Source: Botryllus schlosseri
Taxonomy: Eukaryota
Assembly (NCBI GenBank): GCA_051294905.1
Contig: CM119373.1
Location: forward strand, 33,976,001-34,040,000
Length of the DNA stretch: 64,000 nucleotides
Reading direction: 5' to 3'
The position numbers and the translations under genes are program-made. Position 1 is the stretch's first letter, and each line of letters opens with the position of its first letter. Positions 4,996-62,094 of this stretch are shown here, piece by piece. The notes under the pieces were generated by a model. It was not told where the DNA came from. It worked only from the letters and a program-made list of their open reading frames with translations, and ran no database searches.

Positions 4996-7470
4996 GTCGA
5001 TTTGAGTCGAGTTGAAGATAAAATTGCTTCCGGCACTGCAATTACGTGTTCCTAGCTTCTATGAGTAATTTATCCGCAGGAATTATAGTTTTAATAGTGG
5101 ATGTGAGATATTTATGAAGTCACGATCATGATCAACTCACACCACTGCCAAAAAATGCAATGAAACAGGCATGGTAGAGAAATACCGTCTTTGATGTGAT
5201 GTAGAGCTGGCATTGTATTTTTGCAGTTGCAAGAAACGTACATATTTCAATTTTTCACATCATTCAAACTGCTGTGATATAATTATCAATGATACTTGAA
5301 TACTCGACTCAGCGCCTGATGCTCGATTAGGAATGACAGGCGCTCGATTCAGAATCGGATCATTCAAGGACTAAATTTCGCTCAGCCATACTGACCAGGT
5401 ATGTGACGGTACGAGAAATGCAAAAACGCTACAACGAAATCAATCCTAAATCATAAATGCAGTACTCAAGGCCATCATTAGTTCTTGTTTGCAAACAGCC
5501 GACTTTTGGGAGGAGCCAGCAAAAAAGGAATCCAAACCCACGTTCTGCAAGATCAGCGATGTAACCAATCATTTGCTGTGGCGAACGAAACAAATATTGG
5601 AAACCTTCCGGACATTCAATCTGAGCTTTTTGTATCTTTGTTCAAACAGAGTAATATTTTGATGGGCTCAAAATATCACGCGAGTCCAAAACTACCAAAT
5701 CAAGAATAATGCGAAATGAAGGGTTAAATAGTTAAAATCATATGGACTTACGGATAGTGAATCGAAGAATGGAGGAAGAGCCATCCACACAAGTTTACAA
5801 AATCACAGATAACGGACGGAAAACTGAAGGCAGGAGCCATGCTTTTTCGCAAGTTGTATACAAAATCAGGGGCAAGCTATATGCAAAATCACGAATTTTA
5901 GAATTTGATCCGTTAACGTTTTGTGGCGTTACAAGATAATTGCCGCTGCATAGAATTCATGCATATTCAAGTCATGGCTATTCAAGTCCATCACAGTCCT
6001 CAACAAATTAGTTTTGGGATTGAACTCGAGGATACTTTTGCAGCGACTCGGCATCATTTCACCATGGGATCCACCACATACGTATATCTTTCCGCCAATG
6101 CAATAAGTACTTAAATTTGAACGCTCCAATTCGAGTTCTTGTACTGGAATTATCGTCCAAATACTTTCATCACTGGGTAGCAGAAAAATGTCGTTGACAT
6201 ACCCAGAGTTCACAGTTCTTCCACCAACAAGGTAGATGGCCTTATTATATGAACATGCACTTGCCATAGCTATCACAACCGGTAATGATGGTCCAACTGA
6301 CCAAGTAGACGTTGAAAAGTTGAAACATTCCACATCCAGCGCAAAGGTGGTATGATATGCATCAAAACCACCAATTACATGAAGTTTATCCTGAGATATA
6401 GAGTAGGCAGACAAACACAATCTGGATTGCTTGTTGGGAAGCTTCGACCACTTGTTATTGATTGTGTCATATTGGGCCAAATGTTCAAGATATGAAAAAT
6501 ATAATATACCGGGCTTACGTGCAACTACAGTATCGTATCCAAAAAATGCAGGTTCAAGTTTTCTCCAGGGTGAATCATTTTCAAGAAAATTACGACAGTA
6601 CAAATCCCACTTGTCATCAACGACATATATGTAGCAGTCCATCACAACTACCATGAGAAATGGCCTCAAACTAACTTCAGCATTGAAATGTCGCTGCTCT
6701 GTCAAAGACTCTCTGTCCATGTCAAACCACATAAGACGAGAAACATCCTCATTCACTATTATAATATTCGGAGTACAGTCACCTTTGTAATCACTGGCTT
6801 CTACATCTGACTTCTCCGGTAGTGACTTCATGATGTGCATCATGCATTCGGTGGATTTAGCAACAGTTGGTTGCTGAGATAAAAATTTACGATAGTAGAC
6901 AGGGATTTTCTCCAGATCGATATACTTCAGTAATTCAAAAAGTTGATCAGCGCGATCCAGATCCTCATTCACCCAAATCAATGACGCTTTGCACTTAATA
7001 ACATCCAACACATGCAAATCTTCAGAGCATATCAAATCCTCAAGGAAATCGAACTCAAGTTCCTTGAAATCAGCAGTTTTCATGATCGAATGAAAGTGAT
7101 CACGAGCAAAACTTCTGCATGCTTGCTGTAATTGTTGACAGGAATACTTATCGGCAATACTTCTGGTGTCGAAAAACGAGTCCACGTCAAGATTTTGATC
7201 CAAGAAAAGCGACATTGCATCGCATACCTTATTAATTCCAAACAAATGCGCCACATACATTAGTTTTCCGTTTTTTGAATCAGAAAAGACGCTTGTCCCC
7301 GGTACATGATTTCAATGCAGGTCATCACACATTCAGGATCTACATGCTTTAAATCAACCATTCCCAACATGTTCTCTTTTGTGTCGTGATTGAGCATCTT
7401 AGCAAAATACTCAGAACTTGCGGCAATGACGCACTTGTGAACAGAGATCTCCTTTTCTCCCACTTTTATA
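4996..7470 (+). repeat. Segmental duplication block matching ~25086-27545 and ~56267-58740
   Basis: Kelch C 3' flank and body. Confidence 0.93.
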
Positions 7471-7568
7471 ATGAAGTCGCAATACTGTTGATTGATTCTG
7501 AACTCCTCAAATTTCGATAGAATGTCGAGGGCATGACCCGTCTTGCCAATATCCAGAAGATGCTTCAT
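5929..7568 (-). pseudogene. BTB-BACK-Kelch gene, D/C chimera, frameshifted (C1)
   Basis: ORF 7260-7568 (BTB) plus ORF 5929-7260 (rest). 1-bp deletion in an A run (GAA AAA CTA ATG -> GAA AAC TAA TG). Body matches type C; first codons and upstream flank match type D. Confidence 0.88.
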
Positions 7569-8943
7569 CCCAGTCGACGTGGTAGTTCCGAGTCAACTCA
7601 AAATATATAGCTAATTCAAAAACTTTGAGATAGGGCACCAAAATATGATTCTGTAAAATCATAAACATGGTCAGTACAGTCGTGTGCAAGGATGAGTTTC
7701 GTCATGAAGGCATATGAGCATATGAAATGCAAAATAGCTTGGACACAATACTTCCATCAGTTTCCTTACAAATGTAGATGAGAGAAACTATCTTCATATA
7801 CGTCAGCGAAAAACAATATCTTTCGGCTATACAAATTTGAATATGAATGATCAGGTCACAGTAGATACTATTAGTTGCACAAATGATAACCTACAGAGCA
7901 ATGCACATTCTGTGACTTGATGAAATCTGAGAAATGTCCATGCCTTGTTCTACGGCATATTATAACATTCAGGAATACACGGTTGATCCGAAATACAGAG
8001 AGTTTGCATAAAATTGCGCTAGCACTGAAAAGAAGGGCTTGACACAATGATTTGAGTACTCAAATCTGAATCGAGTAATAATGCTAATGATTCGGGACAA
8101 GTAGTGAGATACGTCGGTTCAAGTACTGAAATTACCTGTTCCTGGTCGCTATGTGTAATTTATCATCGGGAATTATAGTTTTAATAGTGGATATGGGAAA
8201 ACTGTGAAGCGACATCTTGTTCAACTCACACCGTTGTCAGAATGGCATGGTGAAAAAAACATGTATAATCTTTAATGTGTTGTAGAGCTGGCAATGTATT
8301 TTTGTGGTCGCCTGAAACGAACATATTAGAATTTTTCACATCATTCATACTTCTGTGATATTATTATCAGTGATACTTGAATACTCGACTCGACAATAAA
8401 TACTCGATTAAGCACCAAATCATTCCAGCACGGCACTCAATTTCCCCCTACTAAGAAGGCATGTGATGGTGCAAGGAATGCAAACCGCTGCATCGAGATC
8501 AATCCTAAACCTCAAATGCAGTGCTTTGGACTATCATTGGTTTTTGCTTGCCAGCGGCTGCATTTTAGGAGAAAGCCAACAGAAACGTAATCTAGACCCA
8601 CGTTCTGCAAGATCTGCGGTGTAACCAATAATATGCTCTGGTGACCGAAACAAATATTGAACATCTTTCGGACATTTACCTTCAGTTTTTTGTGTCTTTG
8701 TTCCCACACAGAAACACTTTCATTGGCTTACAATATCATTTGAGTGCAACACGACAAAATCAAGGGGAATGCGAAAGTAAGGATGAAAAAAATTAATTAG
8801 ATGGGCTTACGGATAGTGAGAAAGAGTCATGCACACAGTTTTACAAAACGACAGATCACAGACAGAAAACTAAAGGCAAGAGCTATGCTTTCTCACATGA
8901 TGTATATAAAATCAGGGGCAAGCTATATGTAAAATCACAAATT

Positions 8944-8967: not shown

Positions 8968-10656
8968 TCACATGGTAATTGCTGCTGCATAGACTTCATG
9001 ATTAAGAGATTTCAAGTCATGGCTATCCAAGTCTATCATCGTACTCAACAAATTAGTTTTGGGATTGAACTCGAGAATACTACTGCACGGCTGAAAATCA
9101 TCACAGTATCCACCACATATGTATATCTTTCCGCCAATACAATAAGTACTTAACTTTGACCGCTCCAATTCGGGTTCTTTTACTGGAATTAACGTCCAAA
9201 TACTTTCATCAAAGGGTAGACAAAGAATGTCGTTTACATACTCAGACTCAGACTGAGAGTCAGAGTCAAACTCAGAGTCAGAGTCAGAGTTCACAATTTT
9301 TCCGCCTAGAAGGTAGATGGTCTTATTATAGGTGCATGCACTTGCTTGAGCTCTCTTCGATGGTAATGATGGTCCAACTGACCAAGTAGATGTTGAAAAG
9401 TTGAAACATCTTACATCCCGCACAAAGTTTGCAAATAGATCATAACCACCAATTGCGTAAAGCTTATCCTGAGATATAGTGTAGGCAGACCAAACCACTT
9501 TAGGTTGCTTGTTGGGAAGCTTCGACCACTTGTTATTGACTGTGTCATATTGTGCCAAAAAGCGGTTCGGATAATCATTTGCTAAATAAAATTTACCTGA
9601 TTTACATGCAACTACAATATAGTATCTTGGAAATGCACATCCAAGTTTTCTCCAAGGTGAATCATTTTCAAGAAAATTACGACGGTACAAATCATAATTG
9701 ATATCAATGACATATATGTAGCAGTCCATCACAACTACTGCGTTGAATTTACTCATACTATCAGTATATTTGAAATGTCGCTGCTCGGTCAAGGACTTCC
9801 TGTCTATGTCAAACGACGTAAGACGTGAAACTTCCGGATTCGCCATTATAATACTAGGAGTACAGTCACCTTTGTAATCACTGGCTTCTAAATCTGATTT
9901 TTCTGGTAGTGACTTCATGATTTGCATCATGTATTCGGTGGATTTGGCAACAGTTGGCTGCTGAGATAAAAATTTACGATAGTAGACAGGGATTTTCTCC
10001 AGGTCGATGTGCTTCAATAAATCAAAAAGTTGATCGGCACGATCCAAGTCGTCATTGACCCAAATCATTGACGCTTTGCACTTGATAACATCCAACACAT
10101 TCAAATCATCGGAGGAAATCAAATCCTCAAGGAAATCGAACTCAAGTTCCTTGAAAGCGGATGTTTTCATGATCGAATGAAAGTGATCCAGAGCAAAACT
10201 TCTGCATGCTTCCTGTAATTGTTGACAGAAATACTTATCAGCAATATACCTGGTATCGAAAAAGGAATCGACGTCAAGATTTTTCTCCAGTAAAAGGGAC
10301 ATAGCATCGCATACTTTATCAATTCCAAACAAATGCGCCACATACATTAGTTCTTCCGTTTTTCGAATAGGAAAATATGCTTGTCCAGTGTACATGATTT
10401 CAATGCAGGTCATCACACATTCAGGATCTACATGCTTTAAATCAACCTTTCCCAACATGTTTTCTTTTGTGTCGTGATTGAGCATCTTTGCAAAATACTC
10501 GGAACTTGCGGCAATGACGCACTTGTGAACAAAGATTTCCTTTTCTCCCGCTTTGATAATGAAGTCGCAATACTGTTGATTGATTCTGAACTCATTAAAC
10601 TTCGATAGAAGGTCGAGGGCATGACCCGGTTTGCCAATATCCAGAAGATGTTCCAT
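8968..10656 (-). CDS. BTB-BACK-Kelch (KLHL-like) protein type A, copy 1, 562 aa from the conserved MEHLL start
   Basis: BTB motif CDFIIKAGEKEIFVHKCVIAASSEYF, BACK region, Kelch blades (LYAIGG, IYLLGG, IYICGG). Single coding exon. AATAAA about 20 nt after the stop. Confidence 0.93.
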   Translation of the reverse strand: MEHLLDIGKPGHALDLLSKFNEFRINQQYCDFIIKAGEKEIFVHKCVIAASSEYFAKMLNHDTKENMLGKVDLKHVDPECVMTCIEIMYTGQAYFPIRKTEELMYVAHLFGIDKVCDAMSLLLEKNLDVDSFFDTRYIADKYFCQQLQEACRSFALDHFHSIMKTSAFKELEFDFLEDLISSDDLNVLDVIKCKASMIWVNDDLDRADQLFDLLKHIDLEKIPVYYRKFLSQQPTVAKSTEYMMQIMKSLPEKSDLEASDYKGDCTPSIIMANPEVSRLTSFDIDRKSLTEQRHFKYTDSMSKFNAVVVMDCYIYVIDINYDLYRRNFLENDSPWRKLGCAFPRYYIVVACKSGKFYLANDYPNRFLAQYDTVNNKWSKLPNKQPKVVWSAYTISQDKLYAIGGYDLFANFVRDVRCFNFSTSTWSVGPSLPSKRAQASACTYNKTIYLLGGKIVNSDSDSEFDSDSQSESEYVNDILCLPFDESIWTLIPVKEPELERSKLSTYCIGGKIYICGGYCDDFQPCSSILEFNPKTNLLSTMIDLDSHDLKSLNHEVYAAAITM

Positions 10657-10721
10657 CACAGTTGACCAGTTTATAGCAAAAATATATACCTCACTCAAAA
10701 ACTTTAGAATAATATCGGTAA

Positions 10722-10790
10722 CTGTAACATCATACATATGGTGAAATTAGTTGTACTATATTTATGCAACGGTATCATCATATTCCTAAC
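10722..10790 (-). promoter_or_regulatory. Putative short 5'-UTR intron / splice acceptor of Kelch A1
   Basis: Minus strand GTTAGG...CTAAT...TGTATGATGTTACAG. Homologous branch point and acceptor upstream of all Kelch types (e.g. CTGAC...TTTTTCAG at 33557-33580). Confidence 0.5.
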
Positions 10791-13836: not shown

Positions 13837-14727
13837 CACAGCTCACCAGTTTAAAACCAAAATATATAGCTCACTAAAAAACTTTGGAATAAAACTGTAA
13901 CCGTAACATCAGATACATGGTGAGTTTAGTTGTAGCATATTTATGCAACAGTATCATCATAGTCCTAACATAAAGATAGGAAAGAAAATGTAATCCCACA
14001 TGTTAGCGAAGAGTGATATCCTTGGGCTTAGGTGACAGTAGATAGAATACTAAGGAAGAAATTGAATATTACAGGGCCAAGGACATGTTAGGGTCTTTAA
14101 CACAATCTAAGAAGAAATACCTTCTTTATTCTACGGAAAGCAAAAAAACACAGACATTTACAGTGAACACAAATAGATGGAAGAAAAGTACCAACCAAGT
14201 AACAGCCAAACCGAATCACATCGGAAAAACTATTTAGCGTACGTAACAAAATCGTACTATAAAATTGCAATTTGTGATGCTGAACCACAGTTTTTGAAGA
14301 ACCTACTTATAGTACTAAAAGAGTTACACTGTTTGAAAATTTTCTAGCATCCACTAACAAGTAGTGTCGAGTACAATTTAGTTCAGTTCATTAGGAATTT
14401 ACCTCAATTCAAAACACCACAAGACTACGAAACAATGAAAAAAAGCAAGGTGTCGAAACGATTAGAAGTAGGCTAGTCTTTGATACCAGACAGTCACCCA
14501 CCCAGGCCCAAGCAAAGAAAATGGATGACATGCACACTGAACGAAGAGTAAAGGAACATAATATAAAAAGACAAATGACAAAATAAGGTGGCATGTGACG
14601 GAAGACGAGATCGATACGTCAGGTCAGAGGTCATGATCTGGTACACCTGAGGGCTGGCTAGTGCTCAAACTGCTCATGCTCATTCAGTAGAAATTGATTA
14701 TACTTGACTTGAATATCGATACACTTG

Positions 14728-22196: not shown

Positions 22197-22689
22197 CAGT
22201 GTTGTAATGACTTGAGTCATGATTCGAGTCAAGTCCGACCCAAGTCGTGATTTTTGGTGACTTGACCGAACTCGAATCATTTTTTCGAATGGTTGAAATG
22301 ACTCGACTCAGTTTTTCTGTTGCCTCGACTTGTACTTGAACCAAGTCATATGGCTCGAGACCAGGACAGACACGACAGACATATCATTGTAACATAGAAG
22401 AATAAAGTTACCACATTATTGGTATTTCATATGTAAGTCTCGATACTCCGGAAATTGGGCCACAAACTGTTAAAACAAAAGAGAATTACTATATTATGAG
22501 TGTAAGCCATTCTTTATCACTCGAGACTCAAGTCACAACACTATGACTCGGATTAGACCCTCTACCAGCTGTCTTGGCCTCGGACTTGACTCGATCGTGA
22601 ATTGAAAATGACTCGACTTGACTGGAGTAAAAACTATAAAAGTGAGACTGACCTGTGACTCGGAACCTTGTGATATGGTTTCAACCCTA
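22197..22689. mobile_element. hAT-type MITE (GACTC family)
   Basis: Termini CAGTGTTG / CAACCCTA; degenerate TSD CTCTAAAC / CCTCAAAC; absent from the paralogous Kelch 3' flank near 8500. Confidence 0.7.
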
Positions 22690-23159
22690 CCTCAAACCTC
22701 AAATGCAGTGCTTCGGACAATAATTGGTTTTGTTTGCCAGCGGCTGGATTTTGGGAGAAAGCCAGCAGAAAAGTAATCCAGACCCAGATTACGTAAGATC
22801 AGCGGTGTAACCAATGACTTGCTGTAGCGACCATAAAAAATATTGAAACCTTTCACACATTTAAATTATGCTTTTCGTCTTTTTTATCCCACTCAGTAAC
22901 ATTTTGATTGGCTCAAAGTAACACGTGAGCGCAACACTACAAAATTGAGGGAAATTGGAAAGGAAGGAACACGAAGTCTAAATCAGCTGGGCTTACAGAT
23001 AGTGAGAAAGCGTCATGAACACAGTTTTATAAAACAACGGGTAACAGACAAAAAACTAAAGAAAAGATCCATGCTTTCTCGCAAGATGTATAAAACCCAA
23101 CGCAAGATGTGTGCAAAATCACTAATTTTAAAAATTTGATCCGTTAACGTTTTGTGGCA

Positions 23160-24549
23160 TCACAAGATGATTGCCGAAGCATGGATTCTATTATTCAGAT
23201 ATTCCGGGTCATCACTATGGAAGTCTATCAACGTACTCAACAAATTAGTTTTCGGATTGAACTCGAGGATATCATCGCAGAGCATTTCATCATTGTATCC
23301 ACCACATATGTATATCTTTCCGAGAATAAAATGAGTTTTGAAATCCATTCGCTTCCATCCAGGCTTTTGAACTGGAATTATCGTCCACATACTTTCAGCA
23401 CTGGGTAGCCAAAGAATGTCGGTTGCATACATACAGTTCACAGTTTTTCCGCCAAGAAGGTAGATGGCCTTATTCAATGTACATGCACTTGCATCAGTTC
23501 TCTCAACTGGCAATGATGGTCCATGCGACCAAGTAGATGCTGAAAAGTTGAAACATTACACATCCAGCACAAATTTTGATGAAAATATATCAAAACCACC
23601 AATTGCGTAAAGCTCGTCCTTAGATATCGTGAAGGCAGACGCATCCACAATGGATTGCTTGTTAGGAAGCTTCGACCACTTGTTATTGATAGTGTCATAT
23701 TGGGCCAAAGACTCGATCCGATTATGACTTGCTAAATAAAATTACCCTGATTTACGTGCAACTACTTCACCGTATCGGTATTCTGGTAATGGACGTTCAA
23801 GTTTTATCCAGGGTGAATCATGTTCAAGAAAATTACGACGGTAGAAATCAGAATTGGTATCAATGACATATATGTAGCAGTCCATCACAACTATCGCGTT
23901 AAATCGTGTCATACTATCGTTATAATTGAAACGACGCTGCTCGATCAAAGACATTCTGTCCATGTCAAACCACATAAAACGTTTCACTTTTCCGTTCGTC
24001 ATTATAATGCCAGGTGTGCAGTCACCTTTGTAATCACTGGCTTCTACATCTGATTTCTCAGGTAGTGACTTCATGATGTACATCATGCATTCGGTAGATT
24101 TGGCAACAGTAAGTTGCTGAGATAAAAATTTACGATAGTAGGTAGGAATTTTTTCCAGGTTCATTACATCATAAAGTTGATTGGATCGATCCAAGTTGTC
24201 GTTGAAACAAATCATAGAGGCTTTGCACTTGATAACATCCAACACATTCAAATCTTCAGAGGAAACAAATACTCCATGAAATCGAACTCAAGTTCTTTGA
24301 CATAGGCCGTTTTCATGATCAAATGAAAGTGATCGCGAGCAAAATTTCTGCATTCTTGCTGTAATTGTTGACAAAATTACTTATCAGCAATATGTCAAGA
24401 TCTTTCTCCAGAAAAAGTGAAATGGCATCGCATACTCCATTAATTCCAAACAATTGCGCCACAAACATTAGTTTTTCCGTTTTTCGAATCAGAAAAGAAG
24501 CTTGTCCAGTGTATACATGATTTCAATGCAGGTCCAGAAGATGCTCCAT
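23160..24549 (-). pseudogene. BTB-BACK-Kelch pseudogene type E, copy 1
   Basis: About 230-bp deletion in BTB (junction near 24533), TA insertion, further deletions in BACK, nonsense codons at 23742-23744 and after FVLDV. Kelch blades related to type D. Confidence 0.9.
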
Positions 24550-26002
24550 CACAGTCGACTAGTTCCGAGTCAACCCAAAATATGTAGCTAATTCTAGCAC
24601 TTTGAGATAGGACACCAAATTCCGATTCTGAAAAATCATACACATGGACAGTACAGTCGTGTGCAAGAACGAGTTTGGTCTTGAAGGTATACGAATATTG
24701 GCCTGAATCGAAATTGAAAATAGCTTGGACAGTATATTTCAACAATACTTTCATCATTTTCCTTACAATTGAATACGAGAGAAAGTATATTCAAAGATGT
24801 CAGCGGAAAACAATATCTTAAGGCTTTATAAATTTGAACATGAGTGATCGGGTCACAGTAGATACTATTAGTTGCACAAATGAAAACGTACAGAGCAATG
24901 CACATTCTGTGATTGATGAAATCTAAGAAATGTCAATGCCTTGTTGTGAGGTATGTAATAAAATTCAGGAATACACAGTTGATCCAAAATAGAGAAATTT
25001 GAATAAAATTTGGCTAGCACAGAAAATAACGGCTGAACGCAATGATTGGAGTACTCAAATCGTAATCGAGTATTAATTATATTGATTTGAGTCGAGTTGA
25101 AGATAAAATTATTTCCAGCATTGAAATTACGTGTTCCTAGCCCCTATGAGTAACTTATCAGCAGGAATTATAGTTTTAATAGTGGATGTGAGATATTTAT
25201 GAAGTCACGATCATGATCAACTCACACCACTGCCAAAAAATGCAATGAAACAGGCATGGTAGAAAAATACCGTCTTTGATGTGATGTAGAGATGGCATTG
25301 TATTTTTGCAGTTGCAAGAAACGTACATATTTCAATTTTTCACATCATTCAAACTGCTGTGATATAATTATCAATGATACGTGAATACTCGACTCAGCGC
25401 CTGATGCACGATTCAGAATGACAGGCGCTCGATTCAGAATCGGATCATTCCAGGACTAAATTTCGTTCAGCCATACTGACCAGGTATGTGAAGGTACGAG
25501 AAATGCAAAAACGCTACAACGAAATCAATCCTAAATCATAAATGAAGTACTCAAGGCCATCATTAGTTCTTGTTTGCAAACAGCTGGATTTTGGGAGGAG
25601 CCAGCAAAAAAGGAATCCAAACCCACGTTCTGCAAGATCAGCGATGTAACTAATCATTTTCTGTGGCGAACGAAACAAATATTGAAAACCTTCCGGACAT
25701 TTAATCTGAGCTTTTTGTATCTTTATTCATACAGAGTAACATTTTGATGGGCTCAAAATATCACACGAGTCCAAAACTACCAAATCAAGAGTAATGCGAA
25801 ATGAAGGGTTAAATAGTAAAAATCATATGGACTTACGGATAGTGAATCGAAGAGCCATCCACACAAGTTTACAAAATCACAGATAACGGACGGAAAACTG
25901 AAGGCAGGAGCCATGCTTTCTCGCAAGTTGTATACAAAATCAGGGGCAAGCTATATGCAAAATCACGAATTTAAGAATTTGATCCGTTAACGTTTTGTGG
26001 CG

Positions 26003-27643
26003 TTACAAGATAATTGCCGCTGCGTAGACTTCATGCATATTCAAGTCATGGCTATTCAAGTCCATCACAGTCCTCAACAAATTAGTTTTGGGATTGAACT
26101 CGAGGATACTTTTGCAGCGACTCGGCATCATTTCACCACGGGAATCACCACATACGTATATCTTTCCGCCAATGCAATAAGTACTTAAATTTGAACGCTC
26201 CAATTCAGGTTCTTGTACTGGAATTATCGTCCAAATACTTTCATCACTGGGTAGCAGAAAAATGTCGTTGACATACTCATATTTCACAGTCATTCCACCA
26301 AGAAGGTAGATGGTCTTATTATATGAACATGCACTTGCATTAGCTCTCTCAACTGGTAATGATGGTCCAGCTGACCAAGTAAATGTTGAAAAGTTGAAAC
26401 AATCCACATCCAGAGCAAAGTTTCCAAGATATGAATCAAAACCACCAATTGCATGAAGTTTATCCTGAGATATAGTGTAGGCAGACAAACACAATCTGGA
26501 TTGCTTGTTGGGAAGCTTCGACCACTTGTTATTGATTGTGTCATATTGGGCCAAAGACTCAAGACATGTAAAATATAATATACCGGGCTTACGTGCAACT
26601 ACAGTATGGTATCCAAAAAATGCAGGTTCAAGTTTTCTCCAGGGTGAATCATTTTCAAGAAAATTACGACAGTACAAATCCCACTTGTCATCAACGACAT
26701 ATATGTAGCAGTCCATCACAACTACCATGAAAAATGGCCTCAAACTAACTTCAGCATTGAAATGTCGCTGCTCTGTCAAAGACTCTCTGTCCATGTCAAA
26801 CCACATAAGACGAGAACCATCCTCATTCACTATTATAATATTCGGAGTACAGTCACCTTTGTAATCACTGGCTTCTACATCTGACTTCTCCGGTAGTGAC
26901 TTCATGATGTGCATCATGCATTCGGTGGATTTAGCAACAGTTGGTTGCTGAGATAAAAATTTACGATAGTAGACAGGGATTTTCTCCAGGTCGATATACT
27001 TCAGTAATTCAAAAAGTTGATCAGCGCGATCCAGATCCTCATTCACCCAAATCAATGACGCTTTGCACTTAATAACATCCAACACATGCAAATCTTCAGA
27101 GCATATCAAATCCTCAAGGAAATCGAACTCAAGTTCCTTGAAATCAGCAGTTTTCATGATCGAATGAAAGTGATCACGAGCAAAACTTCTGCATGCTTGC
27201 TGTAATTGTTGACAGGAATATTTATCGGCAATACTTCTGGTGTCGAAAAACGAGTCCACGTCAAGATTTTGATCCAAGAAAAGCGACATTGCATCGCATA
27301 CCTTATTAATTCCAAACAAATGCGCCACATACATTAGTTTTTCTGTTTTTCTAATCAGAAAAGACGCTTGTCCCCGGTACATGATTTCAATGCAGGTCAT
27401 CACACATTCAGGATCTACATGCTTTAAATCAACCATTCCCAACATGTTCTCTTTTGTGTCGTGATTGAGCATCTTAGCAAAATACTCAGAACTTGCGGCA
27501 ATGACGCACTTGTGAACAGAGATCTCCTTTTCTCCCACTTTTATAATGAAGTCGCAATACTGTTGATTGATTCTGAACTCATCAAATTTCGATAGAAGGT
27601 CGAGGGCATGGCCCGACTTGCCAATATCCAGAAGATGTTCCAT
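26003..27643 (-). CDS. BTB-BACK-Kelch protein type C, copy 2, 546 aa
   Basis: Intact ORF with BTB, BACK and Kelch blades. Confidence 0.93.
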   Translation of the reverse strand: MEHLLDIGKSGHALDLLSKFDEFRINQQYCDFIIKVGEKEISVHKCVIAASSEYFAKMLNHDTKENMLGMVDLKHVDPECVMTCIEIMYRGQASFLIRKTEKLMYVAHLFGINKVCDAMSLFLDQNLDVDSFFDTRSIADKYSCQQLQQACRSFARDHFHSIMKTADFKELEFDFLEDLICSEDLHVLDVIKCKASLIWVNEDLDRADQLFELLKYIDLEKIPVYYRKFLSQQPTVAKSTECMMHIMKSLPEKSDVEASDYKGDCTPNIIIVNEDGSRLMWFDMDRESLTEQRHFNAEVSLRPFFMVVVMDCYIYVVDDKWDLYCRNFLENDSPWRKLEPAFFGYHTVVARKPGILYFTCLESLAQYDTINNKWSKLPNKQSRLCLSAYTISQDKLHAIGGFDSYLGNFALDVDCFNFSTFTWSAGPSLPVERANASACSYNKTIYLLGGMTVKYEYVNDIFLLPSDESIWTIIPVQEPELERSNLSTYCIGGKIYVCGDSRGEMMPSRCKSILEFNPKTNLLRTVMDLNSHDLNMHEVYAAAIIL

Positions 27644-27742
27644 CACAGTTGACTAGTTTATAGCCAAAATATATACCTCACTCAAAAACTTTAGAATAAT
27701 ATCTGTAGCCTAACTGTAACATCATACACAAGGTGAGATTAG

Positions 27743-28653
27743 CAGTGTTGGGATCAAGTCACCACCTTCGAGTCACGAGTCATTGCATATTTTGACTCGA
27801 GTCAAGTCAAGTTAATCGATTTTCAAAGGTGACTTGAGTCAAGTCAAGTCACTTGAATGTTGGAGGTGACTCGAGTCAAGTCGTGTCAAGTCAAGTCAAG
27901 TCACAATTCAAGTCAAGTCGCCTTTTCGAAGTATGAGGCATGATTATGTCATTGCATTTTGCTAGCTGTCTGAAATACAGATTAAGTGGTCATTATTCTG
28001 AACTGATGAACGAATATAAATATATACGCAAGATGGTGCTGTATCGCTCACGTATACGTACAGCTGTTGAACTACGTAAGTAATTGCATAGCCTCAGTTT
28101 ATAGTTACCAGCCAAAATAGAGAATAGAGAGACGAATTGTTAAGATGGAATACATTACCAATGTATACATATTGATATGATACGATTCGAATCGACTCCA
28201 ATAATTGAGTAAACTATATTTCAATTCATTTTCAATAAAACAAGAGGTTTGGTTAAGGTAAGAACAGGGAACAGAAATATATATTTTACTATTCAATTAC
28301 TTTACTACTTGTTCACGACAACATAAGTTGTTAACTTCGAACATTTCTTTTGTGGTCAATTTATTTGTGAGTGAACAATGTGAACAACTCAGTAAAACGC
28401 ACCATAATTAAATGATTGGTCGCTCTCACGGTTTACACCAGCGTTTCGCGAACAATCTGAACATATGCAAGATTCATTGATTTTTATCGACACCGATAAT
28501 GTTATGACTTGAAATTGACTCGTGAATTTTTCACCGAGTCATGAGTCAATCAACATTTCTGATATGCCAAGTTAAGTCAAGTCATTTTAGCAAAGTGAGC
28601 GGAGTTAAGTCAAGTCATAGGAAAAAGGTTCGACTCGAGTCATACCAACACTG
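27743..28653. mobile_element. hAT-type MITE (GAGTCAAGTC family), ~910 bp
   Basis: TIR CAGTGTTGG / CCAACACTG; TSD GAGATTAG / GTGATTAG; same family as 20329-21217. Confidence 0.88.
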
Positions 28654-28925
28654 GTGATTAGTTGTACTTTCGGTATCATCATATTCGGAAGAAAATGGAA
28701 TCCCACATGTCATCGATGAATATTATAGGGCAAAGCACATTTTTGGGTCCCAACAAAATCTGAGAAGAAATCCCTTCTTTATTCTACAGAAAGCCAATAA
28801 AACACAGACATGTACAGTGGACACCAAACGATGGCAAAAAGGTACCTACATAGTAACAGGCAAGCCAAATCGTATGGGAAAACTTTTTACAGTAAGTAAC
28901 AAAAACGTACTATAAAATTGTAGTT

Positions 28926-29144
28926 AAAGAGCTTCTTGGAGGTACAGAACTTCAATATACAATTGAATAGTATATTCATAGTGAAATGAACCCGAATATT
29001 TTCGGCTGACACTCCTCAGGGGTAATCGTCAGCAACTAGTAGAGAAATGGAAAGAACATCGTATATCAACAATCGTATCACAAAATATGACATGACATGA
29101 CATATGACACCAGCATGAAAGAGAGAGCGTTCAATGTACTATTT
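28926..29144 (-). mobile_element. Short Penelope-like insertion specific to this copy
   Basis: Absent at the paralogous site ~60095; flanked by TAGTT direct repeats; homologous to 16620-16783 and 31680-31740. Confidence 0.7.
28990..29023 (-). ncRNA. Minimal type I hammerhead ribozyme motif
   Basis: Minus strand ACCC-CUGAGGA-G(UGUCAGC)C-GAAA-AUAUU-C-GGGU: 4-bp stem I, intact core, 1-bp stem II, palindromic AAUAUU helix III, UUC cleavage triplet. Confidence 0.7.
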
Positions 29145-30557
29145 TAGTTTGTGATGCTGAACTATAGTGTCAGGAGAACCGACTTATAGTACTTGAACGA
29201 GTTACACATTTTGAAAATCTTTCCAGCATCCACTAACAAGTAGTGCCGAGCACAATTTTGTTCAGTTCATCAAGAATTTTCATCAATTCAAAACACCACA
29301 AGACTGCGATGCAATGAAAAAGAGGAAGGTCTCGATACGATTTGGTGTAGTCTTTGAAATCAGACACCTACCCAGGCCTAGGCAAAGTAAAGGGAAGGCA
29401 TGCACACTGAACGAAGAGCAAAAGAAGATAATACAAAAAGACGAGCGAAAAAATGAGGTGGCATGTGACGGAATGCGAGATCAATATGTCAGGTCATGGT
29501 CTGGTACACATGAAGGCTGACTAGTATTCATTAAGTAGAAATTGATTGTATTTCGACTTGAATATGGACACACTCGAGGAATGTTGGATTGCAGACTTGA
29601 TGATTCAAGTGCTCTAATCCAAACCCTGTAAAAAATGTTATGATCCGAGTCGAGAAGTGGCAGACGATTAATTTTCGAGTACTGAGATCATACATCGTTT
29701 TGCATTAAAGAATATATCATTAACGACATTTAGAGTGACGATGCTATTTTCTCAACGTAGAAGCGTCAAAACCGGATTCGCAGCACCTAAAACTCATAGC
29801 ACAGAGCCACGCAGGTTGCTGGTGATTAAATTTCCGCCAAGTCATGATCAACCCACAGCATTGTCACAAAGTGAAAAAACACTAAATTATCTATATGAGG
29901 TGTAAAACTGCCCTTATTTTTGTGGCTGCATTATAGGTAGCCTACATGAACATTACCGATGATTATAGTTCTATGATGAAATATTAGGTGATACTTGAAT
30001 ATACACCTGGTGCGCAATCTATTAACTCAGGTACCAAGCCCTACTAACAAGCGTAGAACAAACTTCAAAATTTTTAAGCATGGGTATTATACATGTAGGC
30101 CTTCATGGAACATAGAGCGAGAAATATAGAAATGTAGTATGAAAATACACAAGAAACAAACAGAAAGATAGTATGAAAATGGGCATGTAATGAAAATTGA
30201 TGAGCACATGACGCTACACAGTTGGCTTGCTTGATAATTAAACTTGCTTATCGTGAAGATTTAAATGAATACTGTGATCCTACATGAATCTGTTATCTTT
30301 ATTTCGACAAATTTCCATATACCTCAGCCAAAAGATATCTCTTGCAGTTTTACAGATCTTGCAATTGAATTTAAAGAAAAGGGTTCATGTACCAATACTT
30401 AATGTTAATAACTGTGAAGTTTATGCTCATCGTTTCACTACCAATGTGGTGAAAGTAGAAATGGAATTACCGCTGTATATTTTGCTGAATTACAAATAGA
30501 AGTAGCAATATCCATTATCCAAGACATGTCAAAACAAAAAATGACTGATGACACAAC

Positions 30558-31040
30558 CAGGGTCGTGATGAATCGAGTCGCAAATTTCCGTTAACTGGAC
30601 TTGACTCTTGAGTCATTTTATGTATAGACTCGACTTTTACTACAGTCATTGTGAATGACTCAAACAAGTTATAAGACTAGAGCCTTTATATATGGATTGA
30701 TTCAAGTCTCGTGTAACAGGAACGATACCAGAAAAATAGGCCAAGATCAATTGTTTGTACGTTTATTTAGACATGTTAAGACTTGATAAAAATGAGTTTC
30801 TTTTGAATTGGGGCCTTCGATATCACCGAGGAGCTTTTAAAAAGTCGAGTTGAAGTAGACTTGATCTCGGAACACAGAACTCTATGGCTTGTATTTGAGT
30901 CTCAAGACTATGACTCGACTCAACCATTTTTTCTTTGAGCCGGACTAGGACTTGGGCTGGCGGTGAGTTTTAAATGACTCGACTTCACTCGAGCAAAATC
31001 TCTACAAGTAATATTGACTTGTGACTTGGCTACAACCCTA
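30558..31040. mobile_element. hAT-type MITE (GACTC family)
   Basis: CAGGGTCG... / ...CAACCCTA with perfect TSD GACACAAC. Confidence 0.85.
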
Positions 31041-31195
31041 GACACAACACAGAAGAGTCTTCAAAAATAGAACACGTTGATAAATCTATGCGGTTACTAT
31101 GACAATTTCACTCACAAATGTGGTGCAACTGCAAAACTACAACAATACAGAACTCACGGTGATCTGTATCACGACATGAAGACAATGCCTTATTG

Positions 31196-32258
31196 CAGCG
31201 TTTCTCAACCGGGGGTCCGCGGACCCCTAGGGGTCCGCGAAGCAATTTTAGGGGGTCCGCGGGACCTCTAAATTTTTAAAATGGTTGATAACCTAATTTT
31301 TTATTTCATTTTTTAATTTGAGAAAGCATGAGGCAGTTTCGCACCACAACTGCTAAAGCCTCATGACTCATATCGTCATCATAATCGTCTGACATGGACT
31401 ATCGTAGTGTGGAAACTCATTTTCATTGCCAATTTTTCAATAACCTGCTGATACAAACATATTGCTGTTTGGTCCTTTTTGTTGGCGTTTGTGGAAAAAA
31501 TAAAAATATGGAGATAGTAACGCCAGTCAGGGTGACTTCGTAATGTCTGCGAAACCTTCTCGATTTGAAGTTGTCAGTCTCATCAAATTAGTGAACAGTC
31601 GTTTGAAATAAAATTTCTGAAGTATTTCCATAATTTGTCCCAATGCAGGGAACAGCTTCTTGGAGGTAGAGAACTTTAATACACAATTGCATAGTATATT
31701 CATATTGAAATGAACCCGAAAATTTTCGGCTGACACTCGTAATAAATCAGACAATGATATACGTGCTCTTAAAGCTCGGCTATCAGATTTGGCTCATTCT
31801 TATTGCGGATGCCATATCGACAAGGCTGGTGTTTTGATGAACAAGGAGTGTTTCGTTGCTATCAAAGCATTACGCTCCAACCCTGAAATTCATATCACCA
31901 TTGTATGAAGCCTTGTCTAGTTAATGTTCAATTGTACATGGTCGAAAATGTTTGCTCGTAAATATATATGTACAGAACAAGTCGTTTCATGACAGTCTTT
32001 CTCTGGTAGGAAAACTTGGATCCATTCTTCGGAGCATAAAGTTTGTCTATAATACTTTTAGATGAGGATTTCACTTTGACGGTAGAAACTCTCTGCGGGC
32101 CGATCTAAATGCCGTCGCGGGCTGAATCCGGCCCGCGGTCCGTATGTTGCCCATCCCTGCGCTAGATGCCAGACGTGATATGTTGATAAAATATGTGTTT
32201 CTTCATTTTGGTGCCATAAATGTTGCGATCACACCAAAAGTATCGTCGGAAGCGTTAT
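31196..32258. mobile_element. hAT/Charlie-type element, right end deleted
   Basis: CCTTATTG + CAGCGTTTCTCAACC; matches 62095-63138, then fuses into the Kelch D coding sequence. Carries a nested hAT right end (GTTGCCCATCCCTG, ends 32159). Confidence 0.88.
31750..31899 (+). mobile_element. Penelope-like reverse-transcriptase N-terminal fragment inside the hAT element
   Basis: Translates to DNDIRALKARLSDLAHSYCG...KECFVAIKALRSNPEIHIT, resembling the AIKxLRxNxxIxITKxDKG region of Penelope-like RTs. Confidence 0.6.
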
Positions 32259-57194: not shown

Positions 57195-58835
57195 TTACAA
57201 GATAATTGCCGCTGCATAGAATTCATGCATATTCAAGTCATGGCTATTCAAGTCCATCACAGTCCTCAACAAATTAGTTTTGGGATTGAACTCGAGGATA
57301 CTTTTGCAGCGACTCGGCATCATGTCACCACGGGATCCACCACATACGTATATCTTTCCGCCAATGCAATAAGTACTTAAATTTGAACGCTCCAATTCAG
57401 GTTCTTGTACTGGAATTATCGTCCATATACTTTCATCACTGGGTAGCAGAAAAATGTCGTTGACATACTCATAGTTCACAGTTCTTCCACCAACAAGGTA
57501 GATGGCCTTATTATATGAACATGCACTTGCCATAGCTTTCTCAACCGGTAATGATGGTCCAACTGACCAAGTAGACGTTGAAAAGTTGAAACATTCCACA
57601 TCCAGCGCAAAGGTTGTATGATATGCATCAAAACCACCAATTACATGAAGTTTATCCTGAGATATAGTGTAGGCAGACAAACACAATCTGGATTGCTTCT
57701 TGGGAAGCTTCGACCACTTGTTATTGATTGTGTCATATTGGGCCAAAGACTCAAGACATGTAAAATATAATATACCGGGCTTACGTGCAACTACAGTATT
57801 GTATCCAAAAAATGCAGATTCAAGTTTTCTCCAGGGTGAATCATTTTCAAGAAAATTACGACAGTACAAATCCCACTTGTCATCAACGACATATATGTAG
57901 CAGTCCATCACAACTACCATGAGAAATGGCCTCAAACTAACTTCAGCATTGAAATGTCGCTGCTCTGTCAAAGACTCTCTGTCCATGTCAAACCACATAA
58001 GACGAGAAACATCCTCCTTCACTATTATAATATTCGGAGTACAGTCACCTTTGTAATCACTGGCTTCTACATCTGACTTCTCCGGTAGTGACTTCATGAT
58101 GTGCATCATGCATTCGGTGGATTTAGCAACAGTTGGTTGCTGAGATAAAAATTTACGATAGTAGACAGGGATTTTCTCCAGGTCGATATACTTCAGTAAT
58201 TCAAAAAGTTGATCAGCGCGATCCAGATCCTCATTCACCCAAATCAATGACGCTTTGCACTTAATAACATCCAACACATGCAAATCTTCAGAGCATATCA
58301 AATCCTCAAGGAAATCGAACTCAAGTTCCTTGAAATCAGCAGTTTTCATGATCGAATGAAAGTGATCACGAGCAAAACTTCTGCATGCTTGCTGTAATTG
58401 TTGACAGGAATATTTATCGGCAATACTTCTGGTGTCGAAAAACGAGTCCACGTCAAGATTTTGATCCAAGAAAAGCGACATCGCATCGCATACCTTATTA
58501 ATTCCAAACAAATGCGCCACATACATTAGTTTTTCCGTTTTTCTAATCAGAAAAGACGCTTGTCCCCGGTACATGATATCAATGCAGGTCATCACACATT
58601 CAGGATCTACATGCTTTAAATCAACCATTCCCAACATGTTCTCTTTTGTGTCGTGATTGAGCATCTTAGCAAAATACTCAGAACTTGCGGCAATGACGCA
58701 CTTGTGAACAGAGATCTCCTTTTCTCCCACTTTTATAATGAAGTCGCAATACTGTTGATTGATTCTGAACTCATCAAATTTCGATAGAAGGTCGAGGGCA
58801 TGGCCCGACTTGCCAATATCCAGAAGATGTTCCAT
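57195..58835 (-). CDS. BTB-BACK-Kelch protein type C, copy 3, 546 aa
   Basis: Intact ORF. Confidence 0.93.
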   Translation of the reverse strand: MEHLLDIGKSGHALDLLSKFDEFRINQQYCDFIIKVGEKEISVHKCVIAASSEYFAKMLNHDTKENMLGMVDLKHVDPECVMTCIDIMYRGQASFLIRKTEKLMYVAHLFGINKVCDAMSLFLDQNLDVDSFFDTRSIADKYSCQQLQQACRSFARDHFHSIMKTADFKELEFDFLEDLICSEDLHVLDVIKCKASLIWVNEDLDRADQLFELLKYIDLEKIPVYYRKFLSQQPTVAKSTECMMHIMKSLPEKSDVEASDYKGDCTPNIIIVKEDVSRLMWFDMDRESLTEQRHFNAEVSLRPFLMVVVMDCYIYVVDDKWDLYCRNFLENDSPWRKLESAFFGYNTVVARKPGILYFTCLESLAQYDTINNKWSKLPKKQSRLCLSAYTISQDKLHVIGGFDAYHTTFALDVECFNFSTSTWSVGPSLPVEKAMASACSYNKAIYLVGGRTVNYEYVNDIFLLPSDESIWTIIPVQEPELERSNLSTYCIGGKIYVCGGSRGDMMPSRCKSILEFNPKTNLLRTVMDLNSHDLNMHEFYAAAIIL

Positions 58836-58934
58836 CACAGTTGACTAGTTTATAGCCAAAATATATACCTCACTCAAAAACTTTAGAATAATATCTGTAG
58901 CCTAACTGTAACATGATACACAAGGTTAGATTAG

Positions 58935-61939: not shown

Positions 61940-62094
61940 GACACAACACAGAAGAGTCTTCAAAAATAGAACACGTTGATAAATCTATGCGGTTATTATG
62001 ACAATTTCACTCACAAATGTGGTGCAACTGTAAAACTAAAACAATACAGAACTCACGGTGATCTGTATCACGACATGAAGACAATGCCTTATTG

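What the first reader, a model, noticed from the sequence alone, without database searches (positions are those of the whole stretch)
26282..26452. Hypervariable Kelch blades against an almost invariant BTB-BACK
Seen: C2 vs C3 differ at 1 residue in the first ~270 aa but at 23 in the remainder. Fourteen of these lie in a 57-aa window (AIGGFDSYLGNF...GGMTVK vs VIGGFDAYHTTF...GGRTVN), with only about three synonymous changes. C1 adds further variants at the same loops. Known: loops next to the GG motifs form the substrate-binding face of Kelch propellers. Inference: diversifying selection and/or a conversion tract changes substrate specificity, as in an arms race with pathogens, transposons or the cognate ZF.
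Basis: partly seen in the sequence, partly recalled or inferred. Interest (0 to 1): 0.72.

Follow-up and report, generated by a model that had tools for sequence, protein, structure and literature searches.

The report
Swapped loop patch in duplicated Kelch adaptor genes
Two almost identical neighbouring genes for ubiquitin-ligase adaptors differ mainly in one 170-base patch that encodes target-binding loops; the patch looks copied in as a block, and it sits in a gene family whose binding loops are under selection to diversify.

Summary
C2 (26003-27646, minus strand) and C3 (57195-58838, minus strand) align without gaps. They show 1 amino-acid change in codons 1-270 and 23 in codons 271-547. 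Fourteen of the 23, plus 3 synonymous changes, lie in codons 399-455 (26282-26452).

The patch is 11.7% diverged. Non-coding flanks are 1.8%, BTB-BACK 0.4%, and the rest of Kelch 1.8%.

The patch is one block with its own history. Four near-identical copies exist (C0 outside the window, C1, C2, C3). Three share one patch version; only C2 carries the other. Synonymous divergence is also raised in the patch. The patch tree conflicts with the flanking tree. No donor exists in this assembly. The pair's own dN/dS is 1.5, not significantly above 1.

Across 19 intact paralogues of this ~270-kb array, my codon site models with block-local trees find about 12% of Kelch sites at omega ~3. BTB-BACK shows none, and recombination simulations give no such signal. 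Most selected sites lie in or next to the BC and DA loops, including 405, 407, 408, 436 and 452 inside the patch.

Best reading: a gene-conversion-type mosaic in a lineage-specific, diversifying family of CUL3-type BTB-BACK-Kelch adaptors. Substrates, expression and any arms race are untested. Earlier scan notes report a similar Kelch family elsewhere in this genome.

The parts
26003..27646 (-). C2: intact intronless BTB-BACK-Kelch ORF. The probable start is the ATG at codon 2. It carries the minority 'C2-type' patch.
   Evidence: ORF list. Pfam BTB, BACK and Kelch. AF2 model with pLDDT 85.8.
27266..27586 (-). C2 BTB domain (residues 21-127).
   Evidence: Pfam PF00651, E 6.6e-21. phmmer aligns it to the Keap1, KLHL3 and KLHL11 BTB-BACK regions. 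Omega is 0.12-0.29 across pairs.
26972..27241 (-). C2 BACK domain (residues 136-225).
   Evidence: Pfam PF07707, E 2.5e-13. Helical in the model.
26009..26842 (-). C2 six-bladed Kelch propeller (residues 269-546).
   Evidence: DSSP strands of the AF2 model. Foldseek TM-score (normalised to the target) 0.75-0.81 to KLHL12, KLHL3 and Keap1 Kelch domains.
26282..26452 (-). The patch, at its minimum extent (codons 399-455). It covers strand B and the BC loop of blade 4, strands C and D, the DA loop, strands A and B of blade 5, and the start of its BC loop. C2 and C3 differ here at 20 nt (17 non-synonymous, 3 synonymous).
26235..26506 (-). Maximum extent of the discordant tract. It is bounded by the nearest C2/C3 differences outside the patch, at CDS nt 1140 and 1413.
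57195..58838 (-). C3: intact paralogue of C2. It carries the majority 'C3-type' patch at 57474-57644.
5929..7571 (-). C1: a third copy with the C3-type patch at 6208-6378. It is frameshifted by a 1-nt deletion in an A-run at CDS nt 305 (about window 7267). The ORF 5929-7260 restarts at Met105.
22525..32258 (.). Segmental-duplication block that holds C2. Its twin at 53703-63138 holds C3. Identity is 96.6-98.1%. This sets the neutral divergence scale.
   Evidence: Self-BLAST. Partitioned divergences.
9247..9288 (-). A 14-residue Ser/Asp-rich insertion in the BC loop of blade 5 of paralogue A1, also present in A2. This is length variation in the loop where the patch ends.
   Evidence: Alignment. 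Coordinates.

Best explanation
C2 and C3 are recent tandem duplicates, about 1.8% neutrally diverged. They belong to a lineage-specific, intronless BTB-BACK-Kelch family, with at least 35 copies in about 270 kb. The architecture is that of CUL3 ubiquitin-ligase substrate adaptors.

The BTB-BACK half would dock the ligase and is held by purifying selection (omega about 0.2). The six-bladed Kelch propeller would bind the target through its BC and DA loops. About 12% of Kelch sites, most of them in or next to those loops, are under diversifying selection (omega about 3).

The 170-272-bp patch is not a run of independent point changes on C2 or C3. It is a block with its own genealogy, as a gene-conversion-type exchange between paralogues or alleles would leave. 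C0, C1 and C3 carry one version. C2 carries an older-looking version that lacks the changes on the stem of the C clade and is nearest to the patch of C5/C6b.

The swap replaces, as a unit, the BC loop of blade 4, the following DA loop and the start of the BC loop of blade 5. These include positions that align near the Keap1 contact residues R380/N382 and R415/R483.

Shown: the block structure, the discordant history, domain-specific selection in the family, and the fold. Inferred: CUL3 docking, a change in target specificity, and the direction and donor of the conversion.
For: 1. Divergence by partition among C0-C3. It is 0.4-3.7% everywhere except the patch. There C2 differs from C0, C1 and C3 by 10.4-12.9%, while those three differ by 1.8-2.4% among themselves.

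2. Patch against non-coding flanks: odds ratio 7, p = 8e-10. Synonymous sites in the patch are also raised, 3-4 of 40 against 1.83% (p = 0.04-0.007).

3. Trees. In nt 811-1094, C2 and C3 group together (93). In nt 1095-1375, C0, C1 and C3 group together (100) on a branch of 0.055. That is about the length of the C-clade stem in the flanking blocks (0.089 and 0.068), so C2 lacks the stem changes.

4. Polarisation with C4, C5 and C6b. Eleven nt (10 non-synonymous, 1 synonymous) are derived in C0/C1/C3. Four non-synonymous nt are derived in C2. At four further sites C2 groups with C5/C6b, and C3-type with C4.

5. C2-C5 synonymous divergence is 0.05 in the patch against 0.26-0.35 elsewhere, and the sliding profile dips at nt 1174-1443. 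The same segment was therefore exchanged at least once before.

6. Family site models with block-local trees. Kelch LRT is 53.5 (p = 2e-12), with 12% of sites at omega 3.1. Without C2 and C3 the LRT is 44.5. The BTB-BACK control gives 0. Twelve null simulations with within-block recombination give 0-2.6.

7. C2/C3 differences fall on sites selected in the other 17 paralogues: 5 of 23 differences against 14 of 277 sites (p = 0.003), and p = 0.0014 within the patch.

8. Class-wise dN/dS: BC+DA loops 0.98, strands 0.53, other loops 0.41, BTB-BACK 0.26.

9. Fold. AF2 pLDDT is 85.8. Foldseek matches the full length to KBTBD2, KBTBD4 and KLHL22 CUL3 complexes, and the Kelch domain to six-bladed propellers. 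Pfam finds BTB, BACK and Kelch.

10. The C2-type patch joined to the C backbone is seen in independent public runs. Run X8 has a 347-nt contig spanning 26292-26638 with 1 difference. In run X2 the depth over the patch equals that of the unique flank.
Against: - No donor for either patch version exists in this assembly. The best non-self match is 92% for the C2 type. The C3 type matches only C0 and C1, at 97%.
- Among the four copies alone, the pattern 'C2 against the rest' is only a long branch. The conflict appears only after rooting with outgroups, and the C2+C3 grouping upstream rests on about 2 sites.
- The pair's own N:S (17:3) does not exceed neutral (p = 0.28).
- BC/DA loops as a class sit at omega about 1, which by itself is also what unconstrained loops would give.
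- The site models are my own implementation, with branch lengths fixed up to one scale factor per block, and the trees come from about 55 codons each.
- C2 has G501D in the otherwise conserved GG doublet of blade 6 (only the two most divergent of the 19 paralogues also depart there), so it may be decaying.
- Expression is not shown. One bulk RNA run gave only 14 partial reads, all in the BTB part.
- CUL3 binding is untested, and the phi-x-E motif reads T-K-E.
Confidence: 0.62

Rival explanations
1. A burst of point substitutions without conversion. Strong episodic positive selection fixed about 10 replacements in the common ancestor of C0, C1 and C3, and 4 in C2, within 170 bp, and nothing was copied between genes.
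For: No donor is found in the assembly. The polarised changes are 10 non-synonymous to 1 synonymous on the C3-type branch, and 4 to 0 on C2. Several hit sites selected family-wide: 405, 407, 408, 436, 452.
Against: Synonymous divergence is raised in the patch too. Rooted trees place C3 with C2 upstream but with C0 and C1 in the patch. The shared segmental duplication makes C2 and C3 the closest loci, so the C3-type patch would still have had to move between loci. C2 shares the derived synonymous state 1233T with C5/C6b. Six of the 14 changes are in strands or the CD turn.
Confidence: 0.13
2. A neutral mosaic in a decaying array. The cluster turns over by birth and death. Loops drift because they are unconstrained. 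The patch is a chance conversion with no effect on function, and C2 may itself be on the way to becoming a pseudogene.
For: BC/DA loops as a class have omega about 1. Kelch outside the patch diverges at exactly the neutral rate between C2 and C3. C0 is broken by an inserted element and C1 by a frameshift. C2 carries G501D at a GG doublet that is conserved in 16 of the other 18 paralogues. No convincing RNA reads were found.
Against: M2a beats M1a by 53 likelihood-ratio units, with a class at omega 3, while BTB-BACK and the recombination simulations give about 0. Most copies keep open frames of about 545 codons. Strands and the other loops stay constrained at omega 0.4-0.5. Recent singleton replacements in C0, C1 and C3 concentrate in BC/DA loops, 15 against 5 in the rest of Kelch, which has 1.6 times as many sites.
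Confidence: 0.2
3. Assembly artefact. The patch is a chimeric join or a haplotype switch, and no real locus carries it.
For: The array is repetitive. Tunicate genomes are often very heterozygous (my own knowledge).
Against: In run X8, from another study, a 347-nt contig joins the C2-type patch to the upstream backbone with one difference. Other contigs of X8 (0-3 differences each) cover the downstream side as far as 26147. In run X2 the patch has the same depth (about 194) as the unique 3' flank (191).
Confidence: 0.03

Closest known systems
KLHL/KBTBD BTB-BACK-Kelch substrate adaptors of CUL3 ligases (Keap1, KLHL3, KLHL12, KBTBD2, KBTBD4)
   Same: The domain order is the same: BTB, then BACK, then a six-bladed Kelch propeller. 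GG doublets and the conserved Trp are kept in the blades. The variable positions align near Keap1 contact residues: ORF 403-405 to Keap1 R380-S383, ORF 386 to S363, and ORF 434-436 to R415/R483, within about 2 residues depending on which blade is aligned.
   Different: It is not an orthologue of any named member. The best named hit is KBTBD7 at 25% identity. The best of 1.8 billion representatives is 37%. The genes are intronless and stand in a tandem array of dozens. The phi-x-E CUL3 motif reads T-K-E. The first three blades have short, degenerate BC loops. Substrates are unknown.
Adaptively evolving ligase-adaptor families: MATH-BTB and F-box genes of nematodes and grasses (Thomas 2006, Genome Res 16:1017, cited in PMC4091423; F-box in C. 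elegans isolates, PMC8120010)
   Same: There is a large lineage-specific tandem expansion. The ligase-docking domain is conserved and the substrate-binding domain evolves fast, with site-specific positive selection. Pseudogenes mark birth-and-death turnover.
   Different: The recognition module here is a Kelch propeller, not MATH or FBA, and the host is reported to be a tunicate. My paper searches found no report of such a BTB-Kelch expansion in ascidians. I did not read the content of Thomas 2006, because the paper is not held. I rely on its title and my own knowledge.
Gene-conversion mosaics in tandem recognition gene families, such as MHC or KIR (my own knowledge)
   Same: A short tract of a few hundred bp has a discordant genealogy, sits on a near-identical backbone, and covers ligand-contact residues.
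   Different: No donor was identified here. Allelic and paralogous exchange cannot be told apart from one assembly.

Membership tests
BTB-BACK-Kelch (KLHL/KBTBD-type) CUL3 substrate adaptor | N-terminal BTB/POZ domain | tested here: met
   PF00651, E 6.6e-21, residues 21-127. phmmer aligns it to the Keap1, KLHL3 and KLHL11 BTB regions.
BTB-BACK-Kelch (KLHL/KBTBD-type) CUL3 substrate adaptor | BACK (IVR) helical domain after BTB | tested here: met
   PF07707, E 2.5e-13, residues 136-225. The model shows helices up to about residue 250.
BTB-BACK-Kelch (KLHL/KBTBD-type) CUL3 substrate adaptor | C-terminal six-bladed Kelch beta-propeller | tested here: met
   The model has 23 strands arranged as six four-stranded blades. 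Foldseek TM-score (normalised to the target) is 0.75-0.81 over whole Kelch domains of KLHL12, KLHL3 and Keap1.
BTB-BACK-Kelch (KLHL/KBTBD-type) CUL3 substrate adaptor | CUL3-contact phi-x-E motif in BTB | tested here: inconclusive
   In the phmmer alignment to KLHL3 (M-S-E) and Keap1 (L-R-E), the family has T-K-E. The Glu is nearly invariant in alignment A1. The hydrophobic position is Thr. The 3-box was not examined.
BTB-BACK-Kelch (KLHL/KBTBD-type) CUL3 substrate adaptor | Binds CUL3 and recruits a substrate for ubiquitination | not testable with these tools
   This needs biochemistry. No complex prediction was run.
BTB-BACK-Kelch (KLHL/KBTBD-type) CUL3 substrate adaptor | Orthology to a named KLHL/KBTBD gene | tested here: not met
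   The best named hit is KBTBD7 at 25% identity over 31-38% of the query. The nearest protein of any kind is 37% identical.
Adaptively evolving ligase-adaptor gene family (MATH-BTB / F-box type) | Lineage-specific tandem expansion with pseudogenes | tested here: met
   At least 35 matches lie in contig C3 at 33.80-34.07 Mb, and 472 first-look candidates genome-wide. C0 is broken by an insertion and C1 by a frameshift. Several copies have stops.
Adaptively evolving ligase-adaptor gene family (MATH-BTB / F-box type) | Ligase-docking domain under purifying selection | tested here: met
   BTB-BACK omega is 0.08-0.29 in 15 pairs and 0.26 by counting. In M1a, 82% of sites are at omega 0.19.
Adaptively evolving ligase-adaptor gene family (MATH-BTB / F-box type) | Site-specific positive selection in the substrate-binding domain | tested here: met
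   M1a vs M2a LRT is 53.5, or 44.5 without C2 and C3. The BTB-BACK control gives 0, and the recombination null gives 0-2.6. These are my own implementation, not PAML or HyPhy.
Gene-conversion tract | Clustered differences with raised synonymous divergence and sharp limits | tested here: met
   Scan p < 2e-5. Synonymous differences are 3-4 of 40 against a 1.83% background.
Gene-conversion tract | Genealogy of the tract conflicts with that of the flanks | tested here: met
   This depends on rooting with C4, C5 and C6b.
Gene-conversion tract | Identifiable donor sequence | tested here: not met
   In own-genome DNA searches the best non-self match to the C2 patch is 92%. The C3 patch matches only C0 and C1 at 97%.

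The most novel reading that the evidence does not exclude
The array is a germline repertoire of CUL3 adaptors aimed at non-self or selfish targets such as viruses, transposons or symbionts. Exchange of short loop-coding cassettes between paralogues or alleles is then a recurrent way to make new binding faces on a fixed ligase-docking scaffold. That would be a tunicate counterpart of TRIM5-like restriction-factor arrays or of conversion-driven recognition loci. The blade 4/5 segment has been exchanged at least twice (C5/C6b with the C lineage, and C2-type with C3-type), and a third patch version is seen in another individual (run X3).
Probability: 0.12. Interest if true: 0.75.

Novelty: new member of a known kind. 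Interest (0 to 1): 0.42.

Why it matters
Expanded, fast-evolving ligase-adaptor families are thought to mark host-parasite or genome-conflict interfaces. They are documented mainly for MATH-BTB and F-box genes in nematodes and plants. A BTB-Kelch version in an invertebrate chordate would extend that pattern.

It also offers a natural experiment. C2 and C3 differ almost only in three adjacent target-binding loops, so comparing what each binds would test directly whether these loops set specificity.

By itself the patch is an ordinary product of conversion in a tandem array. Without substrates or expression data, its biological role is open.

Tried and rejected
1. Transposon-excision footprint. 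The four changes within 7 nt at codons 407-409 coincide with the 3.37-kb insertion in C0. However, that element (TG...CA ends, 5-bp duplication CAACC) sits inside an already C3-type sequence, so it came later. Rejected.

2. Donor search. DNA searches of the whole assembly with both patch versions found no donor.

3. Pairwise dN/dS as a test of selection. It was not significant for the patch (1.5) or for BC/DA loops pooled over 6-8 independent pairs (0.88-1.04).

4. Excess of recent replacements in BC/DA loops over the non-coding rate. In C0, C1 and C3 the ratio is 1.4, not significant, though these loops clearly exceed the rest of Kelch.

5. Family-wide window scan for other mosaic tracts. It had little power at p < 1e-4. 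Only C2/C3 showed an excess at nt 1174-1353.

6. Expression. The one raw RNA run laid gave 14 partial reads with mismatches, probably from paralogues. The kind of runs X2, X3 and X8 is not on record.

7. Close relatives in other species. None was found: the best match is 37% identity, so no orthologue-based test was possible.

8. Literature. There was no hit for ascidian BTB-Kelch expansions. Thomas 2006 is not held.

9. Simulations. The first run crashed on a numeric overflow and was rerun with bounds.

10. Organism. Earlier scan notes call it a sea squirt. I did not verify this.

11. Structure mapping. No model coordinates were available, so the face assignment rests on DSSP strand order and on phmmer alignment to Keap1, not on measured solvent exposure.
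Full report
**Setting**

The window is G000 contig C3, 33,976,001-34,040,000, in a 495.5-Mb eukaryotic assembly. Earlier scan notes call the organism a sea squirt; I did not verify this.

All long ORFs but one lie on the minus strand. They alternate between intronless BTB-BACK-Kelch genes and C2H2 zinc-finger genes.
- C type: C1 5929-7571, C2 26003-27646, C3 57195-58838.
- A type: 8968-10737 and 34865-36616.
- B type: 12214-13839 and 42969-44636.
- D type and its fragments.

An own-genome search finds at least 35 related copies between 33.80 and 34.07 Mb of this contig. More distant families (25-35% identity) lie on other contigs, and there are 472 first-look candidates in all.

**Observation**

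C2 and C3 align without gaps over 1644 nt, with 35 differences.
- Codons 1-270: one replacement and two silent changes.
- Codons 271-547: 23 replacements and five silent changes.
- Codons 399-455 (26282-26452): 14 replacements (17 nt) and three silent changes.

The clustering is not chance. The permutation scan gives p < 2e-5, also within Kelch alone at codon level.

**Neutral yardstick**

C2 and C3 sit in a segmental duplication, 22525-32258 against 53703-63138, at 96.6-98.1% identity. C2 and C3 differ as follows:

| Partition | Divergence | Against non-coding flanks |
|---|---|---|
| Non-coding flanks | 57/3109 = 1.83% | reference |
| BTB-BACK | 0.37% | p = 0.001, purifying selection |
| Kelch outside the patch | 1.8% | neutral level |
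| The patch | 11.7% | p = 8e-10 |

Silent sites in the patch are also raised, 3-4 of 40 (p = 0.04-0.007). The N:S ratio of 17:3 does not differ from neutral expectation (p = 0.28), and NG86 dN/dS is 1.5. The pair alone therefore shows a block of excess divergence, not selection.

**The patch has its own history**

A fourth near-identical copy, C0, lies just upstream of the window. Its two CDS pieces lie at genome positions 33,960,248-33,960,665 and 33,964,037-33,965,257. It is broken at CDS nt ~1227 by a 3.37-kb element with TG...CA ends and a 5-bp target duplication. C1 is frameshifted by a 1-nt deletion at CDS nt 305.

Among C0-C3, every partition is 0.4-3.7% diverged except the patch. There C2 differs from the other three by 10-13%, and they differ by about 2% from each other.

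Polarising the 20 patch differences with the outgroup paralogues C4, C5 and C6b gives:
- 11 nt (10 replacement, 1 silent) derived in C0/C1/C3;
- 4 replacement nt derived in C2;
- 4 nt where C2 groups with C5/C6b and the C3 type with C4;
- 1 nt specific to C3, at a codon where C1 changed independently.

Maximum-likelihood trees group C2 with C3 in nt 811-1094 (bootstrap 93). This fits the shared duplication. In nt 1095-1375 they group C0, C1 and C3 (100) on a branch of 0.055. That length matches the stem of the C clade in the neighbouring blocks (0.089 and 0.068). The simplest reading is that C2's patch lacks the stem changes of its own clade, so it derives from an older lineage.

C5 and C6b are far from C2 elsewhere (dS 0.26-0.35) but close in this same segment (dS 0.05), with a profile dip at nt 1174-1443. 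The segment was therefore exchanged at least once before.

Neither patch version has a donor in the assembly. The best non-self match is 92% for the C2 type. The C3 type matches only C0 and C1, at 97%. Direction and donor therefore stay open. The donor may be lost, or it may lie on an unassembled haplotype.

**Is it real?**

Public runs from other studies hold the C2-type patch.
- Run X8 has a 347-nt contig covering 26292-26638 with one difference. It crosses the upstream limit of the patch.
- Run X2 shows the patch at the same depth (about 194) as the unique 3' flank (191).
- Run X3 has a 292-nt contig with 13 differences, a third version.

Positions 26282, 26291 and 26144/26145 (K455, M452, D501) vary among runs. 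An assembly chimera is unlikely.

**Fold and faces**

An AlphaFold2 model (mean pLDDT 85.8; its numbering is ORF minus 1) shows BTB, a helical BACK region, and 23 strands forming six blades. Foldseek matches the whole protein to KBTBD2, KBTBD4 and KLHL22 CUL3 complexes. It matches the Kelch part to KLHL12, KLHL3 and Keap1, with TM-score (normalised to the target) 0.75-0.81. Pfam finds BTB, BACK and Kelch.

In ORF numbering the patch covers these elements:
- strand B4, 396-400
- BC loop, 401-413
- strand C4, 414-418
- strand D4, 423-426
- DA loop, 427-437
- strand A5, 438-442
- strand B5, 445-449
- start of the BC5 loop, 450-460

BC and DA loops form the substrate face in Keap1 and KLHL structures (my own knowledge). 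Of the 23 Kelch differences, 14 lie in BC/DA loops, which make up 39% of the residues. Inside the patch it is 8 of 14 against 53%, so there is no enrichment by class.

In phmmer alignments to Keap1:
- ORF 403-405 aligns with Keap1 R380-S383.
- ORF 386 aligns with S363.
- ORF 434-436 aligns with R415 or R483, within two residues depending on the blade.
- ORF 452 takes the first position after GG, the R380-equivalent in blade 5.

**Family-wide selection**

Across 19 intact paralogues, pairwise omega is 0.08-0.29 in BTB-BACK and 0.46-1.13 in Kelch. Counting changes on block-local trees gives:

| Class | dN/dS |
|---|---|
| BTB-BACK | 0.26 |
| Kelch strands | 0.53 |
| AB/CD (other) loops | 0.41 |
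| BC+DA loops | 0.98 |

I then fitted codon site models M1a and M2a (F3x4 codon frequencies, five Kelch blocks each with its own tree).
- The LRT is 53.5 (p = 2e-12), with 12% of sites at omega 3.1.
- Sites with posterior above 0.8: 273, 275, 304, 306, 320, 345, 347, 348, 362, 386, 387, 405, 407, 408, 436, 445, 452, 485, 503, 504.
- They recur blade by blade, in the BC loop and at the end of the DA loop or the start of strand A.
- BTB-BACK, treated the same way, gives LRT 0.
- Twelve M1a simulations with three recombinant sub-blocks per block, and trees re-inferred, give 0-2.6.
- Without C2 and C3, the LRT is 44.5. The C2/C3 differences are then enriched at the selected sites: 5 of 23 differences against 14 of 277 sites (p = 0.003). 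Within the patch the mean posterior is 0.36 at differing sites and 0.03 at the others (p = 0.0014).

Recent singleton replacements in C0, C1 and C3 also concentrate in BC/DA loops, 15 against 5 in the rest of Kelch.

Caveats:
- The models are my own code.
- Branch lengths are fixed up to one scale factor per block.
- The trees rest on about 55 codons each.
- A conversion from any diverged paralogue would also place differences at fast sites.

**Interpretation**

The family has the architecture of CUL3 substrate adaptors. It has a constrained docking half and a binding face under diversifying selection. This matches the pattern known from MATH-BTB and F-box families (Thomas 2006, cited in PMC4091423; PMC8120010).

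The C2/C3 patch is best read as a conversion-type mosaic. It swaps three adjacent binding loops between otherwise near-identical genes.

The following are not shown: that specificity differs, that the genes are expressed, or that an arms race with pathogens, transposons or the neighbouring zinc-finger genes drives this. One bulk RNA run gave only 14 partial reads in the BTB part. C2's G501D, in a GG doublet that is otherwise conserved (only the two most divergent of the 19 paralogues also depart there), warns that C2 may be decaying.

**Novelty**

The nearest proteins in 1.8 billion representatives are 37% identical, and the nearest named one is KBTBD7 at 25%. I found no paper on such an expansion in ascidians.

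Conceptually this is a new member of a known kind. I tested the same idea independently on this cluster.

Noticed in passing
L031:2666-6036 (genome C3:33960666-33964036, about 12 kb upstream of the window start): A 3.37-kb element with TG...CA ends and a 5-bp target-site duplication (CAACC) interrupts copy C0 at CDS nt ~1227, inside the patch. It looks like an LTR-type insertion. Its LTRs and coding content were not examined.
   Followed up: partly
window 7260-7275 (C1): C1 has a 1-nt deletion in an A-run at CDS nt 305, which shifts the frame in the BTB domain. Even so, 9 of its 11 unique Kelch replacements lie in BC/DA loops. Its first 22 codons carry states typical of D-type paralogues (T11, I17), suggesting a 5' conversion.
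   Followed up: partly
window 34865-36616 (A2) against 8968-10737 (A1): A2 lacks six codons (FIIKAG) in the first strands of its BTB domain. It is otherwise nearly identical to A1, so it may be a damaged copy.
   Followed up: no
window 9247-9288 (A1), and the same place in A2: A 14-residue Ser/Asp-rich insertion lies in the BC loop of blade 5. It shows length variation in a target-face loop among paralogues.
   Followed up: no
whole array (loci L006-L014): In many pairs, silent divergence is higher in BTB-BACK than in Kelch (for example B1-B2 0.164 against 0.060, and L007-L011 0.223 against 0.068). L010 groups with the A type in the BTB tree but with L007/L013 in the Kelch trees. Whole domains seem to be reshuffled between paralogues.
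   Followed up: partly
window 36-1139 (+): A 367-aa ORF has a zinc-finger-like N-terminus reminiscent of domesticated hAT/ZBED-type transposases. It has no Pfam hit at E <= 0.01.
   Followed up: no
window 26144-26145 (C2 codon 501): C2 has Asp in place of the second Gly of the GG doublet of blade 6 (16 of the other 18 intact paralogues keep Gly; the two most divergent differ). Contigs of runs X2 and X3 read Gly here, and X8 shows both, so this variant is polymorphic.
   Followed up: partly
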